From Octopus sinensis (taxonomy: Eukaryota), in the NCBI RefSeq assembly GCF_006345805.1, contig NC_043012.1:13516001-13580000 (forward strand): a stretch of DNA of 64,000 nt, in the 5' to 3' direction. Every line of letters starts with the position of its first letter. Position 1 is the first letter of the stretch. Under the pieces are notes generated by a model that saw only the letters and a program-made list of their open reading frames with translations, did no database searches and was not told the DNA's origin. The translations under genes and the position numbers were made by a program. Positions 1,562-27,246 of the stretch are shown here, in pieces.

Positions 1562-2710
1562 TTAAATAGAGTCTGATGAAACAATAATGATATAGAGTAG
1601 AAGGAATAAAACACTTGCTGACAAAATGGATTTGTCTAGCATCTGATGTTTTATTCGACATTTCTTAATGCGCCTTTTAGATTTTGTCTTAATAATTGGT
1701 TCATCTGCGTTTCCTATGATCCCGATTTTATTTTTCGATCCGTTTGTTTCTTGATCCTTTTCTGAAATTGTGATGGCGCCAGACTCGTGGGCGAACAGTT
1801 TACACACAATTACAGAGCTGATAGAAGAAAAACCGCTTACAAGTGTCAGATTTAAGAGGTATATCAAATATATAGAAGGTTCACGGGAATTATTACCCAG
1901 TTTTTTCTCAGTTTCAGAAAGATAAACTATATTTGCTAGAAAAACAGTAATTGCAACAGAAACTTTCTCTCCAGAAGAAGCCGGCAATACATAGACAGAT
2001 AAGATCAATAATGTTAACATAATTGGCGGTATAATTTTGGTAACTGTTGCACTAGAATATTTTCTTTTGCAGTACACAATAACTCCAGCTGTTATGATCT
2101 CCTGTTTTTCAACCTCGCTGTATTCATATCTATAATCCCATTGATTCGATATTGGCTTATAAGTTACTTCGTACAGAAAATAATCTAACATTATCTCCGT
2201 ATTCATCTGGTGTTCAAAACAAACAGATATGTCACATTCGTGCTCATCAAAAGGATATTTATTAACGTTAACCTTGCAGTAAGTATTGAAAATTCTGTCT
2301 ATATGTAAGTGGACACTTCCGTCACTCTTTATCGTGACTCGCGAATTTTCATCAAATGTGAATTTACCTGTTACGCTGTTACATATTTGTACGTTAGGAT
2401 ACCACACTTTCTGTAAATCAACTTTTACATAGCTTATATTATTTTGTTCACGATTCCACATAAGATTAACATCATACCACAATAATCCAAGAATGAGATT
2501 ACTTGTCATTATACCTTTCGTAATATCAAATTCAATAATGTTCTTTATTTTAAGCGATACATTTACGTATACTTCGTCTTCGTCGAAGGTAACGGGTCTT
2601 TCAGATTTCTCATAGTTTCTAAACAAATTCGCTACAAAGAGCTTCTTAGCTAACTTTTGTGAAGCCGTGCTTCCGATTAGCATTAAATATATGACAAAAA
2701 TTAATATCAT
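1562..2710 (-). CDS. Chemotactile-receptor-like Cys-loop ligand-gated ion channel subunit, copy A (382 aa, single coding exon)
   Basis: Uninterrupted ATG-to-TAA ORF. Has an N-terminal signal-peptide-like segment, LFRNYEKSERPV helix, WYDVNLMW, loop A VWYPNVQICNS, Cys-loop C145-x13-C159 with YPFD, M1 ending LPASSGEK, M2 KVSVAITVFLAN, M3, a short ~50-aa M3-M4 loop and a terminal M4. Lacks the loop-B Trp and loop-C vicinal Cys-Cys. A single-exon nAChR-derived gene without the ACh cage matches the cephalopod CR family. Confidence 0.92.
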   Translation of the reverse strand: MILIFVIYLMLIGSTASQKLAKKLFVANLFRNYEKSERPVTFDEDEVYVNVSLKIKNIIEFDITKGIMTSNLILGLLWYDVNLMWNREQNNISYVKVDLQKVWYPNVQICNSVTGKFTFDENSRVTIKSDGSVHLHIDRIFNTYCKVNVNKYPFDEHECDISVCFEHQMNTEIMLDYFLYEVTYKPISNQWDYRYEYSEVEKQEIITAGVIVYCKRKYSSATVTKIIPPIMLTLLILSVYVLPASSGEKVSVAITVFLANIVYLSETEKKLGNNSREPSIYLIYLLNLTLVSGFSSISSVIVCKLFAHESGAITISEKDQETNGSKNKIGIIGNADEPIIKTKSKRRIKKCRIKHQMLDKSILSASVLFLLLYIIIVSSDSI

Positions 2711-3835
2711 TATGTTAGGAAAGAGAGAAAATATCGCTTGCGTTACTTTTCCAGAGGTCTTGCCTTGAAATATATATTGAGTTTCTGTAAAAGATTCAAT
2801 ATATTCGAAATATAGGAGGAAACCTCAACAAATACTTCGAAGTAATTGTCAATTGTCAGTATAATTCTAGCAAATGTAACGTATATATGTATGTGTGTGT
2901 GTGCGTATGTATGATGTACGTATTTTATGTTTATGAGTACAATATGTTTTTTTTTAAATAAAGATATGCAACAACATCTAAAATTTAAGCGATTGGAAAT
3001 ACCTTGTTTTTATATAATATTCAGTGATCCATAAGATATTTCGTGGTATGCAAAATAAAAAGTGCTTCAGAAATACAGCAGACTACATCAAGAATGTCAC
3101 CGGTTATCAGCTGTCTTCAGTTCATAAAAGCGATGTAGGAATATACGCGAGAGTTCCCCCTTATGTATGCTGAATATTTACATACTTAATTCTGACTGAC
3201 TACCCTCCAGTTTTCCCTCTTCCCCCCTTTCTCTTCCTTTACACATACACACACACATACACATACATATGTATGTATATATATATATATATATATATAT
3301 ATATATATATATATATATATATATATATATATATATGTATGTATGTATATATGTATCTATCAAATTAAGTGTATCAGTTTTAGTGGTATATGCACCCCCC
3401 CATATCAACCTCTAAATCAATTTGTGTTAGTATTGTTTACGGGAAACAATTAATCTTGTAGACAATTGCACTAATTCGATATTAATAATTGCTACAACAA
3501 GTATATTCATTCCTACTCTTTCATTATTATTGACAAAGAATATATCGTTTAGTAGATCTTCAGTTACGTTTCACATTAGATTAAGTGTCATTGAACATGA
3601 TGAAATGTTCAGATCATATTGTTATCAAAAAGTAGTGAGTGTTCTATCCCAAGTGAATCAATGAAAGCTACGTAATTTAAAACTGTTAATAGGTATTGAC
3701 ACGGCCGAGTCTCTGTCAAAGGTGCTCTAGAGGTTTGTGTTTTCTAAATATCTAGGGAAATGTAATTGAAGATGCAACCTGAGAACGTTACATTGTGTTA
3801 AGCAAATGTGAAATTAGAGGTTTATTAATGACATA

Positions 3836-26118: not shown

Positions 26119-27246
26119 TTATAAGGAAATAAAGATATAGAGTACAAGGAACAAAACTGTTGCTGCCAAAAATATCTTGTCTAGCTGTATATATGTTATT
26201 CGACGTTTCTTAGAAGTCAGTTTATCTTTCGACTCAATATTTGGTTCATCTGTGTTTCCTATTATCCCGATTTTATTTTTCGTTCCGTTTGATTCATTAA
26301 CGTTTTCTGAATTGGTGTTGGCACCGGTCTGGTGGACGTACAGTTTACACACAATCACTGAGCCGACAGAAGAAAGTCCGCTTACGAGTGTCAGAATTAA
26401 TAGATATATTAAATATATAGAAGGTTCACGCGAATTGTTACCCAGTTTTTTCTCAGTTTCAGAAAGATAAACAATATTTGCGAGAAAAACAGTAATTGCA
26501 ACAGAAACTTTCTCTCCAGATTCAGCTGGCAATAGAAAGACAGATATGATTAATAATGTTAACATAATTGGGGGTATAATGGTGGTTATGGTTGCACTAG
26601 AAATGTTTCTTTTGCTGTGAACAATAACACCGGCTGTTATGATGCCGTCTTTTGTGATACCCTTGTCATTAAAACTGTACTGCCATTGAGTGGATGCTGG
26701 ATTATATGTCACATTGTACACGAAATTATTTAAAGTTTCTTCCGTGTTAAGCTGGTGTCGAAAGCAAACAGATATTTCACAATTGTGTTCATCAAAAGGA
26801 TATTTTTCAACGTTAATATCGCAGTAAGTATTGAAAATTCTGTCTATATAGAGAGACGTATTTCCATTGCTTGTTAGCGTGACTCCTGTATCTCCATCAA
26901 ATGTGAATTTGCCTGTAGCGCTATTACATATTTGTACGTTAGGGTACCACACTTTCTCTAATTGAGTTTTAATATAGCTTACGTTTTCTTTTTCTTCTTC
27001 CCAGTTAAGATTAGCATCATACCACGATAATCCAAGTATCAGATTACTTGTCATTAATCCTTTTGCAATTTCAAATTCAAGAATGTTCTTTATTTCCAGT
27101 GATACATCTACGTATATTACATCGTCATCATTTAAAACGGGTCTCTGAGACTTCTCATAGCCTCTAAATATCTTGTTCTCTAAGTCCTTCTTTTTTGAAG
27201 CAACTACTCCGATGAGCATTAAAGTTAAACCAAAGATTAATTTCAT
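26119..27246 (-). CDS. Chemotactile-receptor-like Cys-loop channel subunit, copy F (375 aa from ATG, single coding exon)
   Basis: Same architecture as copy A (YCDINVEKYPFDEHNC Cys-loop, ESGEKVSVAITVFLAN M2, four TM segments). True ATG is at 27244-27246. A TTA-to-TAA change ends it 4 codons before the ancestral TAG at 26107-26109. Confidence 0.9.
   Translation of the reverse strand: MKLIFGLTLMLIGVVASKKKDLENKIFRGYEKSQRPVLNDDDVIYVDVSLEIKNILEFEIAKGLMTSNLILGLSWYDANLNWEEEKENVSYIKTQLEKVWYPNVQICNSATGKFTFDGDTGVTLTSNGNTSLYIDRIFNTYCDINVEKYPFDEHNCEISVCFRHQLNTEETLNNFVYNVTYNPASTQWQYSFNDKGITKDGIITAGVIVHSKRNISSATITTIIPPIMLTLLIISVFLLPAESGEKVSVAITVFLANIVYLSETEKKLGNNSREPSIYLIYLLILTLVSGLSSVGSVIVCKLYVHQTGANTNSENVNESNGTKNKIGIIGNTDEPNIESKDKLTSKKRRITYIQLDKIFLAATVLFLVLYIFISL

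What the first reader, a model, noticed from the sequence alone, without database searches (positions are those of the whole stretch)
1562..27246. Tandem array of six single-exon chemotactile-receptor-like Cys-loop genes caught in birth-and-death evolution
Seen: six co-oriented minus-strand copies in 26 kb. A and F are intact, D is one base from intact, and B, C and E are relics. All lack coding introns and were duplicated with shared flanks. Relatedness follows position: B ends in SSDSI like A, while D, E and F are nearly identical. Established: cephalopod CRs are nAChR-derived, single-exon, clustered sucker receptors for poorly soluble compounds and can co-assemble. Inference: A and D/F define two divergent subfamily members whose ligands are probably uncharacterised, and the locus is actively generating and losing touch-taste receptors by unequal crossing-over. 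The family is known; these paralogs and this locus history may not be.
Basis: partly seen in the sequence, partly recalled or inferred. Interest (0 to 1): 0.85.

Follow-up and report, generated by a model that had tools for sequence, protein, structure and literature searches.

The report
Octopus touch-taste receptor gene array
This is part of the known cluster of single-exon "taste-by-touch" receptor genes of the octopus Octopus sinensis: two working genes, one freshly broken copy and three fragments. It is a tidy but ordinary example of how chemoreceptor families grow, decay and overwrite each other.

Summary
Six co-oriented minus-strand copies of a Cys-loop receptor gene lie at window 1562-27246, which is Octopus sinensis CM016874.1 at about 13.52-13.54 Mb.

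- **State of the copies:** A and F are intact single-exon ORFs. D differs from F by one frameshifting deletion but has also lost a family-invariant cysteine. E is a partial tandem duplicate (codons 1-133). B and C are old relics.
- **Family:** The proteins belong to an octopus-specific subfamily nearest the chemotactile receptors. CRT1 is the best solved-structure match, the ACh-binding residues are gone, and the O. sinensis CRT1 ortholog lies 141 kb away on the same strand in the same cluster.
- **History:** Comparison with O. bimaculoides and O. vulgaris shows an ancestral four-member array (F, C, B, A). The D/E addition predates the O. sinensis/O. vulgaris split, so it is not a mis-assembly.
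B is not A-like. The near-identity of D, E and F is largely due to gene conversion.
- **Annotation:** The reference annotation fuses E with A across a non-canonical intron, so A's true ORF is unannotated.

Known family and known mode of evolution; modest novelty.

The parts
1562..2710 (-). Copy A: intact single-exon CR-family gene, 382 aa. Ortholog of O. bimaculoides XP_014778580.
   Evidence: The ORF is open and carries the Pfam LBD and TM domains. It is 86% aa and 92% nt identical to the O. bimaculoides ortholog, itself a 1149-bp single exon. dN/dS is 0.44 overall and 0.14 in M1-M3. This ORF is not annotated as such in the reference.
7283..9864 (-). Downstream flank of B, homologous to the downstream flank of F (23610-25849).
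   Evidence: Self-blastn at 68-72%. It matches the flank of O. bimaculoides relic R2 at 79-81%.
9865..10179 (-). Copy B: relic holding only the last ~105 codons (M3 end, loop, M4), with stops and frameshifts. Ortholog of O. bimaculoides relic R2.
   Evidence: Located; stops and frameshifts. It is 86% nt identical to bimR2, 76% to A and 80% to F.
10180..11651 (+). Inverted copy of the gene-downstream flank, abutting and truncating the 5' side of B.
   Evidence: 10180-11274 matches 24860-23801 and 11268-11651 matches 23711-23327, both inverted.
12511..13974 (-). Downstream flank of C, homologous to the flank of F.
   Evidence: 12511-14503 matches 24669-26653 at 77.3%.
13975..14852 (-). Copy C: old pseudogene covering codons ~56-375, with many frameshifts and stops. 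It lies in the position of O. bimaculoides relic R1.
   Evidence: Located; lesions. It is 89% nt identical to bimR1 in the last 300 nt. To the F lineage it is 91-92% identical there but only 77-81% in the middle of the CDS.
15598..18119 (-). Duplication unit of D: 325 bp downstream, the CDS, and 1058 bp upstream.
   Evidence: 94.6% identical to F unit 25781-28296 over 2538 bp.
15923..17061 (-). Copy D: young pseudogene. It has a 1-bp deletion in codon 92 (~16788) plus loss of an invariant Cys. The orthologous O. vulgaris copy is open.
   Evidence: Deletion and substitutions, O. vulgaris comparison, conservation of the Cys. dN/dS against F is 1.07.
18226..19708 (-). Duplication unit of E: codons 1-133 plus ~1.08 kb of upstream flank. 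It is a partial tandem duplicate of D 16663-18119.
   Evidence: 94.8% identical to D and 94.1% to F. The breakpoint lies in TCTCTCTATA, and (TA)n repeats sit at the unit edges.
18179..18625 (-). Copy E reading frame: signal peptide and the first half of the ligand-binding domain, then 15 unrelated codons and a stop. The reference annotation uses it as 'exon 1' of XP_036366082.
   Evidence: ORF, homology break, annotated gene span, junction.
21201..21593 (+). PIF1-like helicase fragment (Helitron-type remnant) inside the E-F spacer.
   Evidence: Pfam PF05970, E = 3.5e-10. The spacer is collinear in O. vulgaris.
23610..26118 (-). Downstream flank of F, the reference copy of the flank shared by B, C and D.
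   Evidence: Self-blastn.
26119..27246 (-). Copy F: intact single-exon CR-family gene, 375 aa. Already annotated. Orthologs are O. vulgaris CAI9734027 and O. bimaculoides XP_014778579.
   Evidence: ORF, Pfam domains. The protein database holds an exact match, P0001. It is 97.6% aa identical to the O. vulgaris protein. dN/dS in M1-M3 against O. bimaculoides is 0.19.
27247..28296 (-). Upstream flank of F, shared with D and E. The proximal ~400 bp are nearly identical in all three copies.
   Evidence: Shared extent; site patterns and divergence.

Best explanation
The interval is the distal part of the chemotactile-receptor (CR) gene supercluster on Octopus sinensis chromosome CM016874.1.

The genes encode intronless pentameric ligand-gated cation-channel subunits of about 380 aa. 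They descend from nicotinic receptors but have lost the acetylcholine site. A and F are the two functional genes here. They belong to an octopus-specific subfamily that is sister to the CRT1/CRB1 group, and they differ from each other at positions that line the ligand pocket in CRT1. They therefore probably respond to different, still unknown, contact chemicals, alone or co-assembled with other CR subunits (inferred).

The array evolves by tandem segmental duplication, pseudogenisation and erosion.
- The common ancestor with O. bimaculoides already had four members, in the order F, C, B, A.
- C and B were or became pseudogenes and have been eroded differently in each lineage.
- In the O. vulgaris/O. 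sinensis lineage the F-type unit was duplicated to give D. A 1.46-kb piece (promoter plus the first 133 codons) was then duplicated again to give E.
- D was inactivated only in O. sinensis.
- Superimposed on this, interlocus gene conversion keeps the promoter-proximal region and coding sequence of D, E and F nearly identical while their outer flanks diverge.
For: **Shown**
- Six copies exist, in the states given.
- The proteins carry the Pfam LBD and TM domains.
- CRT1 is the top sequence match among solved structures: 199 bits for F and 177 for A, with nAChRs near 95. It is also the top fold match, at TM 0.87 and rmsd 2.6 A.
- F-CRT1 similarity (181-187 bits) exceeds CRT1-squid CRB1 similarity (119-130 bits).
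- The Cys-loop and the -1' Glu are kept. Loop A Tyr is replaced by Cys as in CRT1, and there is an extra Cys five residues after the Cys-loop (24/24 octopus sequences). Loop B Trp, loop D Trp and the loop C Cys-Cys are lost, and loop C is shortened.
- NJ bootstrap support is 100% for the subfamily, 100% for the A/F clade and 81% for an all-cephalopod CR clade.
- Single-exon paralogs lie on the same strand at 13.36, 13.37 and 13.47 Mb. The CRT1 ortholog, 87% identical to CRT1, is at 13.684 Mb.
- Orthology and collinearity with O. bimaculoides: A-A' 92%, B-R2 86%, C-R1 89%, F-F' 86-94% by region.
- O. vulgaris has F-E-D collinear at 97.2%, and its D copy is open.
- Purifying selection acts on A (omega 0.44, P = 2e-4; M1-M3 0.14) and on F (M1-M3 0.19). 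D and E look neutral (omega 1.07 and 2.1, small counts).
- Gene conversion: upstream-flank sites follow orthology, while CDS sites are mosaic in a species-specific way. D-F divergence is 11-15% in the outer flanks and 0-4.7% from -390 to +1350. Only 3 differences fall in nt 620-1226.

**From the literature**
- CRs are intronless, tandemly clustered, nAChR-derived and form homo- and heteropentamers (PMC11526382).
- O. sinensis contributes 14 sequences to the CR clade (PMC13174522).
Against: - No expression or ligand data exist for any copy.
- The subfamily is sister to, not nested within, the clade holding the two functionally proven CRs (CRT1, CRB1). That deep node has only 81% NJ support, and CRT1-like plus decapod CRs only 45%.
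- I could not verify from the held texts that the O. bimaculoides orthologs are among the published 26 CRs.
- At about half of the positions lining CRT1's hydrophobic pocket, A and F carry polar or charged residues. A 'poorly soluble ligand' is therefore not assured.
- D's single-base deletion could be a long-read assembly error, because no reads were available.
- The duplication mechanism (unequal crossing-over or microsatellite-mediated misalignment) is inferred from junction anatomy only.
Confidence: 0.85

Rival explanations
1. These genes form a sister 'CR-like' subfamily with a different job from the characterised chemotactile receptors. They might detect polar or soluble ligands, or be expressed outside sucker sensory cells.
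For: The subfamily is only 29-33% identical to CRT1 and forms its own 100%-supported clade, sister to CRT1-like plus decapod CRs. The pocket positions are hydrophobic in CRT1 (L37, Y39, Y58, W122, F124, A152, L153, L191). In A they read S, K, I, H, D, E, H, E; in F they read S, E, I, Y, D, R, H, G. A phylum-wide study separates a CR clade from a broader CR-like clade (PMC13174522).
Against: The genes sit in the same co-oriented intronless supercluster as the CRT1 ortholog. They share CRT1-specific derived characters: the loop A Cys, the extra Cys after the Cys-loop, and the shortened loop C. The subfamily is so far octopus-only, whereas the CR-like clade spans several molluscan classes. The pocket mapping crosses a 1-residue indel in loop B.
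Confidence: 0.12
2. The reference annotation is right: the locus holds two genes, F and a two-exon gene that splices E's first 133 codons to A's last 246 codons (XP_036366082).
For: NCBI model P0002 spans 17,064 bp from E's ATG to A's stop. E keeps the same ~1 kb upstream flank as F and D, so it may still be transcribed.
Against: The implied intron begins AA and ends AT, or AC...TA if shifted by one base, so there is no GT-AG. A has its own in-frame N-terminus and signal peptide, conserved with the single-exon O. bimaculoides ortholog under purifying selection. The published family description is intronless (PMC11526382).
Confidence: 0.04
3. These are ordinary nicotinic acetylcholine receptor subunits, as their database names say ('delta-like', 'unc-29-like').
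For: Automatic names in NCBI. The Pfam domains and fold are shared with nAChRs.
Against: Loop B Trp, loop A Tyr, loop D Trp and the loop C Cys pair are all absent. The M3-M4 loop is short and total length is about 380 aa. The sequence score to CRT1 is about double that to any nAChR. The genes are intronless and tandemly expanded within octopuses only.
Confidence: 0.02
4. D, E and F are haplotypes or collapsed repeats wrongly assembled as three copies.
For: Their coding identity is high, 96-99%. The assembly is long-read based, which is my own knowledge of GCA_006345805.1.
Against: An independent assembly of the sister species has the same three copies in the same order with the same spacer. 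The outer flanks of the copies differ by 8-15%, several times the 1-2% divergence between the species. Flank sites sort by orthology.
Confidence: 0.01

Closest known systems
Octopus chemotactile receptor CRT1 (O. bimaculoides XP_014786442; PDB 8EIS, 9E6B)
   Same: - Pentameric Cys-loop channel subunit of about 380-410 aa, encoded by a single exon.
- Same chromosome cluster and strand: the O. sinensis ortholog lies 141 kb from F.
- Loop A Tyr replaced by Cys, an extra Cys after the Cys-loop, a short loop C without the Cys pair, and loop B Trp lost.
- GEK cation-selectivity motif kept.
- Best sequence and fold match for F and A.
   Different: - Only 31-32% identical, and in a separate 100%-supported subfamily.
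- A and F have a 1-residue deletion in loop B.
- They carry polar or charged residues at many CRT1 pocket positions, including L153, which is reported as conserved in CRs (bioRxiv 10.1101/2025.10.28.685082).
- No ligand is known.
Squid CRB1 (PDB 8EIZ) and the decapod CRs
   Same: Cephalopod nAChR-derived sensory receptors lacking the ACh site. They group with the octopus sequences in an 81%-supported clade.
   Different: CRB1 is 27-29% identical to A and F, and less similar to F than CRT1 is. CRB1 keeps Tyr at loop A and lacks the extra Cys.
Birth-and-death evolution with gene conversion in tandem chemoreceptor arrays (vertebrate ORs, V1Rs, T2Rs; insect GRs and IRs)
   Same: Intronless tandem paralogs, lineage-specific gains, pseudogenes and fragments, a fast-evolving ligand-binding region over a constrained channel or core, and local homogenisation between young neighbours (PMC11526382).
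   Different: A different protein superfamily. Here the partial duplicate E keeps a promoter and has misled gene prediction.
Canonical nicotinic acetylcholine receptor subunits (for example alpha7)
   Same: Fold, Cys-loop, four TM helices and the M2 -1' Glu.
   Different: The aromatic box and the loop C Cys-Cys are absent. The intracellular loop is short, the genes are intronless, and identity is about 25%.

Membership tests
Cephalopod chemotactile receptors (CRs) | Pentameric ligand-gated channel architecture: N-terminal LBD with a 13-residue Cys-loop, plus four TM helices | tested here: met
   Pfam PF02931 and PF02932 are found in A and F. Both Cys-loop cysteines are present. The AF2 model has a beta-sandwich plus 4 helices, mean pLDDT 78.
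Cephalopod chemotactile receptors (CRs) | Loss of the canonical acetylcholine-binding residues | tested here: met
   Loop B Trp is E in A and R in F. Loop A Tyr is Cys, loop D Trp is Ile, and the loop C Cys-Cys and both Tyr are absent through a 7-residue deletion. CRT1 shows the same pattern.
Cephalopod chemotactile receptors (CRs) | Intronless coding sequence | tested here: met
   A (1149 bp) and F (1128 bp) are uninterrupted ORFs. The orthologs and paralogs are single exons too. The literature describes CRs as intronless (PMC11526382, PMC13174522).
Cephalopod chemotactile receptors (CRs) | Tandem clustering with bona fide CR genes | tested here: met
   The O. sinensis ortholog of CRT1 (87% identical) is at 13,684,062-13,685,294 on the same strand, 141 kb from F. 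Further family genes lie at 13.36, 13.37 and 13.47 Mb. CRT1 and the A/F orthologs share one chromosome in O. bimaculoides.
Cephalopod chemotactile receptors (CRs) | Closer to characterised CRs than to nAChRs by sequence | tested here: met
   F scores 199 bits to CRT1, 122 to CRB1 and at most 96 to nAChRs. A scores 177, 111 and at most 94. In the reciprocal search, CRT1 retrieves this subfamily (E about 1e-47) ahead of non-cephalopod receptors (1e-26).
Cephalopod chemotactile receptors (CRs) | Phylogenetic placement inside the clade bracketed by the functionally proven CRs (CRT1 and CRB1) | tested here: inconclusive
   The NJ tree puts the subfamily as sister to (CRT1-like + decapod CRs). The all-cephalopod clade has 81% bootstrap and the CRT1-like + decapod node only 45%. 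No ML tree was made and the full published set was not available.
Cephalopod chemotactile receptors (CRs) | Flat hydrophobic orthosteric pocket (reported as a common property of CRs) | tested here: inconclusive
   By alignment, CRT1 L37, Y39, Y58, W122, F124, V151, A152, L153, L191, F192 correspond in A to S, K, I, H, D, F, E, H, E, I. In F they correspond to S, E, I, Y, D, F, R, H, G, I. This points away from a greasy pocket. The mapping crosses a loop B indel, and no pocket geometry was computed.
Cephalopod chemotactile receptors (CRs) | Cation-channel pore | tested here: met
   The ESGEKVS motif with the -1' Glu is conserved. Function as a channel was not tested.
Cephalopod chemotactile receptors (CRs) | Expression in sucker sensory epithelium, and activation by contact chemicals | not testable with these tools
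   No transcriptome or functional data could be reached.
Cephalopod chemotactile receptors (CRs) | Ortholog listed among the published 26 O. bimaculoides CRs | not testable with these tools
   The primary papers (van Giesen 2020; Allard 2023; Kang 2023) and their supplements are not held. Accession searches found nothing.
Birth-and-death multigene family | Paralogs of different ages, pseudogenes, and lineage-specific gain and loss among related species | tested here: met
   The ancestral members F, C, B and A are shared with O. bimaculoides. D and E occur only in the O. vulgaris/O. sinensis lineage. D is broken only in O. sinensis. C/R1 and B/R2 are eroded differently in the two lineages.
Concerted evolution by interlocus gene conversion | Mosaic site patterns that conflict with orthology, and a trough of divergence over the converted tract | tested here: met
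   Flank sites sort by orthology, and CDS sites are species-specific mosaics. The divergence profile is 11-15% in the outer flanks and 0-5% over the promoter-proximal region and CDS. No formal conversion test was run.

The most novel reading that the evidence does not exclude
The A/F subfamily may be a second functional class inside the CR supercluster. Its ligand pocket has swapped CRT1's hydrophobic wall for charged and polar residues: K or E at position 39, D at 124, E or R at 152, H at 153. That would tune it to polar or soluble cues, not greasy contact ligands. In this reading the promoter-bearing fragment E and pseudogene D are not mere debris. They would act as conversion donors and acceptors that shuffle ligand-binding-domain variants into F, or even yield an E-A hybrid transcript.
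Probability: 0.12. Interest if true: 0.6.

Novelty: new member of a known kind. Interest (0 to 1): 0.3.

Why it matters
It gives a clean, dated case study of how the octopus touch-taste receptor repertoire turns over.
- An ancestral four-gene array, followed by a lineage-specific duplication and a partial duplication.
- A species-specific inactivation of one copy.
- Gene conversion that masks the true age of the copies.

In practice, it flags an annotation error. XP_036366082 is a chimera of a gene fragment and a neighbouring gene, and the real 382-aa receptor A is missing from protein databases. This matters for anyone counting or cloning CRs in O. sinensis or O. vulgaris.

It also nominates an uncharacterised CR subfamily with an unusually polar predicted pocket for ligand screening. 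None of this changes the known picture of the family.

Tried and rejected
- **Linking the orthologs to published CR names.** The primary papers and supplements are not held. Accession and name searches returned only unrelated papers. The idea that CR numbers are XP-accession suffixes failed, because CRT1 is XP_014786442.
- **Independent read-level support for D's frameshift.** An exact-protein look-up of D's 281-aa ORF found nothing on record.
- **O. bimaculoides F ortholog as a pseudogene.** I first took it to be broken. The gap turned out to be a 444-N assembly gap.
- **First trees.** The first NJ tree gave weak deep support. The second had invalid saturated distances. It was redone with capped distances.
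- **Fold search.** It confirms the pLGIC fold and ranks CRT1 first. The E-values barely separate it from nAChRs, so it does not settle family membership.
- **Canonical splice sites for the annotated E-A intron.** None were found in any phase.
- **Further copies.** None exist elsewhere in the window, 27-64 kb.

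
Full report
**Where the window comes from.** The protein encoded by copy F is an exact match to a database protein, P0001. P0001 lies on a 59,466,961-bp contig. A look-up of the neighbouring gene model places the region on Octopus sinensis GCA_006345805.1, chromosome CM016874.1. Aligning that locus to the window puts window base 1 at about 13,516,001. The DNA is about 31% G+C with many microsatellites and transposon remnants.

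**Checking the observation.** A tblastn search with A and F finds six copies, all on the minus strand, between 1562 and 27246. There are none in the remaining 37 kb.
- **A** (1562-2710, 382 aa) and **F** (26119-27246, 375 aa) are uninterrupted ORFs.
- **D** (15923-17061) is 97.8% identical to F in nucleotides. A single 1-bp deletion in codon 92, near 16788, is its only reading-frame defect.
- **E** (18226-18625) differs from F at 5 of 399 nt over the first 133 codons. Homology then ends abruptly.
- **C** (13975-14852) covers codons ~56-375 with at least eight frameshifting indels, a ~77-nt deletion and three stops.
- **B** (9865-10179) holds only the last ~105 codons, with stops.

Self-comparison shows that the copies were duplicated together with their flanks.
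- D unit 15598-18119 matches F unit 25781-28296 at 94.6%.
- E unit 18226-19708 matches F 26847-28323 at 94.1% and D 16663-18119 at 94.8%.
- A downstream flank of 1.5-2.5 kb is shared by B, C, D and F.

Three details need correction.
- D also carries Tyr->Phe, Asn->His and Cys->Ser substitutions within 20 nt just after the deletion. The Cys is invariant in the other 23 octopus family sequences aligned. Restoring the frame alone would therefore not give a normal receptor.
- E was truncated at birth, as a partial tandem duplicate.
- B does contain ...IIIASSDSI like A. Over its ~300 alignable nucleotides, however, it is 76% identical to A and 80% to F.

**What the genes are.** A and F carry the neurotransmitter-gated channel ligand-binding and membrane domains. 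Among all solved structures, the octopus chemotactile receptor CRT1 is by far the best sequence match. It scores 199 bits for F and 177 for A. Squid CRB1 scores 122 and 111 bits. The best nicotinic receptors score about 95.

An AlphaFold model of F (mean pLDDT 78) has CRT1 as its top structural match, at TM 0.87 and rmsd 2.6 A. Nicotinic receptors follow closely, as expected for a shared fold.

Column by column, A and F keep the Cys-loop and the pore -1' Glu but lack the acetylcholine site.
- Loop B Trp is Glu in A and Arg in F, and loop D Trp is Ile.
- Loop C is 7 residues shorter, without the Cys pair or either Tyr.
- Loop A Tyr is Cys, exactly as in CRT1.
- A further Cys five residues after the Cys-loop is shared with CRT1 and is invariant in 24 of 24 octopus sequences. 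Squid CRB1 and the nAChRs lack it.

A reciprocal search with CRT1 retrieves two groups. The first is a CRT1-like group at 50-87% identity. The second is the window's subfamily at 29-33% identity and E about 1e-47. Both rank ahead of non-cephalopod receptors at 1e-26.

A neighbour-joining tree of 50 sequences gives the following bootstrap support.
- 100% for the window-type subfamily.
- 100% for the A/F clade.
- 100% for the CRT1-like group.
- 81% for a clade of all cephalopod sequences, including squid CRB1.
- Only 45% for CRT1-like plus decapod CRs.

On this tree the subfamily is sister to, not nested within, the group holding the two functionally proven receptors. F is nevertheless more similar to CRT1 (181-187 bits) than squid CRB1 is (119-130 bits).

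**Genomic context.** Other members of the subfamily are single exons on the same strand of the same chromosome, at 13.36, 13.37 and 13.47 Mb. The O. sinensis ortholog of CRT1 itself is a 1233-bp single exon on the same strand at 13,684,062-13,685,294. That is 141 kb from F, and another CRT1-like gene lies 5.5 kb beyond it. The window therefore shows one stretch of a co-oriented CR supercluster of at least 325 kb.

The literature describes CRs as nAChR-derived, intronless, tandemly clustered subunits that form homo- and heteropentamers and are activated by poorly soluble molecules. O. bimaculoides is credited with up to 26 CRs (PMC11526382). O. sinensis contributes 14 sequences to the CR clade (PMC13174522). 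I could not check whether the O. bimaculoides orthologs of A and F (XP_014778580, XP_014778579) are among the published 26. The primary papers are not held.

**Are A and F functional?**
- Against its O. bimaculoides ortholog, A has dN/dS = 0.44 (P = 2e-4 against neutrality). By region this is 0.14 in M1-M3, 0.54 in the ligand-binding domain and about 1.1 in the intracellular loop plus M4.
- F shows the same pattern, with 0.19 in M1-M3 and 0.70 in the ligand-binding domain.
- D against F gives 1.07 and E between species gives 2.1, on few substitutions.

This is the signature of working chemoreceptor genes next to neutrally drifting copies. A and F differ at six of the fifteen positions that contact ligands in CRT1: 39, 122, 152, 167, 190 and 191. 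Three of these (39, 122, 191) are reported to be under diversifying selection, and two (39, 152) show charge reversals (bioRxiv 10.1101/2025.10.28.685082). Different ligand tuning is a reasonable inference.

About half of CRT1's hydrophobic pocket positions are polar or charged in this subfamily. There is also a one-residue deletion next to L153, a residue reported as conserved in CRs. Whether these receptors also prefer greasy ligands is therefore open.

**Locus history.** In O. bimaculoides the orthologous region (CM046615.1, about 38.15-38.17 Mb) reads F', relic R1, relic R2, A' on one strand.
- Nucleotide identities pair A with A' (92%), B with R2 (86%, extending into the flank at 79-81%) and C with R1 (89%).
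- F and D pair with F' at 86-94%, depending on region.
- The order is collinear, so the common ancestor had four members: F, C, B and A.
- The two middle ones have eroded differently. O. sinensis keeps most of C and a stub of B. O. bimaculoides keeps a stub of R1 and most of R2.
- The apparent break in O. bimaculoides F' is a 444-N assembly gap, not a lesion.

In O. vulgaris an independent assembly is collinear with window 33026-16145 at 97.2% over 17 kb, and it contains F, E and D in the same order. Two conclusions follow.
- The three copies are real and not mis-assembled haplotypes.
- The D and E duplications predate the O. sinensis/O. vulgaris split but postdate the split from O. bimaculoides.

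The O. vulgaris D copy is open for at least 306 codons and keeps the invariant Cys. D's inactivation is therefore specific to O. sinensis, or partly an assembly error, which I could not test.

**Gene conversion.** In the distal upstream flank (-1055 to -414) informative sites sort strictly by orthology: sinF with vulF, sinE with vulE, sinD with vulD. There F differs from D by about 8% in substitutions, five times the 1.5% between species.

In the coding region the patterns are mosaic and species-specific.
- O. sinensis E is F-like at sites 69-78, 176 and 239-248.
- O. vulgaris D is F-like from 176 to 385.
- O. sinensis D and O. vulgaris E keep the older state.

A D-versus-F profile shows 11-15% differences in the outer flanks. 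This falls to 0-4.7% from -390 to +1350, with only three differences between nt 620 and 1226. The copies are older than their coding sequences suggest.

The distal edges of the shared upstream flank are (TA)n or (CT)n(TA)n microsatellites in all three copies. E's coding breakpoint lies inside TCTCTCTATA. This hints at misalignment at simple repeats, but the mechanism is not shown. B's 5' end abuts an inverted copy of the downstream flank at 10180-11651, so rearrangements other than simple unequal exchange have also occurred.

**Annotation.** The reference annotation calls only two genes here.
- F is modelled correctly.
- XP_036366082 ('acetylcholine receptor subunit delta-like', 379 aa) consists of E's codons 1-133 joined to A's codons 137-382 across a 15.9-kb 'intron'.
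- That intron would begin AA and end AT, with no phase giving GT-AG.
- A has its own conserved start and signal peptide, yet its 382-aa product is absent from the protein collection.
- The O. vulgaris annotation has a similar model starting at its E copy.

I regard the chimera as an artefact caused by the promoter-bearing fragment E. Only transcript data can exclude a real hybrid RNA.

**Verdict.** The family, its intronless tandem organisation and its birth-and-death dynamics are all published. F is annotated, and both A and F have annotated O. bimaculoides orthologs.

The new elements are local.
- The correct gene model for A.
- The dated four-to-six-copy history.
- Clear gene conversion among D, E and F.
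- The prediction that this uncharacterised subfamily has a more polar pocket than CRT1.

I rate it as a new member of a known kind, of modest interest.

Noticed in passing
window 1562-18625 (minus strand): NCBI model XP_036366082 is a chimera of fragment E (codons 1-133) and gene A (codons 137-382), joined across a 15.9-kb intron with non-canonical AA..AT ends. A's true 382-aa ORF is missing from the protein collection.
   Followed up: yes
L003 10820-11263 (O. bimaculoides CM046615.1): A 444-N assembly gap interrupts the F ortholog and explains the truncated 296-aa model XP_014778579. The reading frame is open on both sides of the gap.
   Followed up: yes
L008 (O. sinensis CM016874.1 13,674,062-13,695,294): The ortholog of CRT1 (410 aa, 87% identical) and a second CRT1-like gene 5.5 kb away lie on the same strand, 141 kb from copy F. 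The window is therefore part of one CR supercluster.
   Followed up: partly
window 33391-38501 (minus strand): A non-LTR retrotransposon sits in the 46-55% G+C block. It has an ORF1-like protein (36867-38501) and an endonuclease plus reverse transcriptase ORF split into pieces (35053-36816, 34102-34791, 33391-34050). It is flanked by (AGAT)n arrays at 32746-33026 and 39049-39143.
   Followed up: partly
window 21201-21593 (+), within 20.1-22.5 kb: A PIF1-like helicase fragment (Helitron-type remnant) lies in the E-F spacer. The block is also present near the orthologous genes in O. bimaculoides and O. vulgaris.
   Followed up: partly
window 10180-11651: An inverted copy of the receptor genes' downstream flank abuts the truncated 5' end of relic B. 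With 7480-8444 it gives a palindrome-like arrangement. Part of this 'flank' (23327-24504) also occurs upstream of the F ortholog in O. bimaculoides, so it may be a dispersed repeat.
   Followed up: partly
window 18100-18125, 19690-19735, 28270-28300: (TA)n or (CT)n(TA)n microsatellites mark the distal edge of the upstream flank shared by D, E and F. E's coding breakpoint at 18226 lies inside TCTCTCTATA.
   Followed up: partly
window 26833-27660 and the matching parts of D and E: The region from about -414 to +69 relative to the ATG has almost no informative differences among the six D/E/F copies of O. sinensis and O. vulgaris. Either a constrained promoter and 5' UTR or repeated homogenisation could explain this.
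   Followed up: partly
window 13975-14300 and 14300-14852: Relic C is 91-92% identical to the F lineage over its last 300 nt but only 77-81% in the middle of the gene. This suggests an old conversion tract or a mosaic origin.
   Followed up: no
window 26119-26121: F ends four codons earlier than D and the O. vulgaris F ortholog (FISL* versus FISLLSSV* and IALSSSV*), because of a TTA->TAA change just after M4.
   Followed up: partly
window 4310-6460: Local 96%-identical direct and inverted duplicates (4310-4572 with 5619-5358 and 6410-6148; 4718-5189 with 5689-6153) surround long (ATAG)n arrays between A and B.
   Followed up: no
window 47346-47600 and 47998-48252: A pair of 255-bp inverted repeats, 98% identical and about 400 bp apart, overlaps an ORF (47268-47816) with no Pfam match. 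It could be a foldback or terminal-inverted-repeat element.
   Followed up: no
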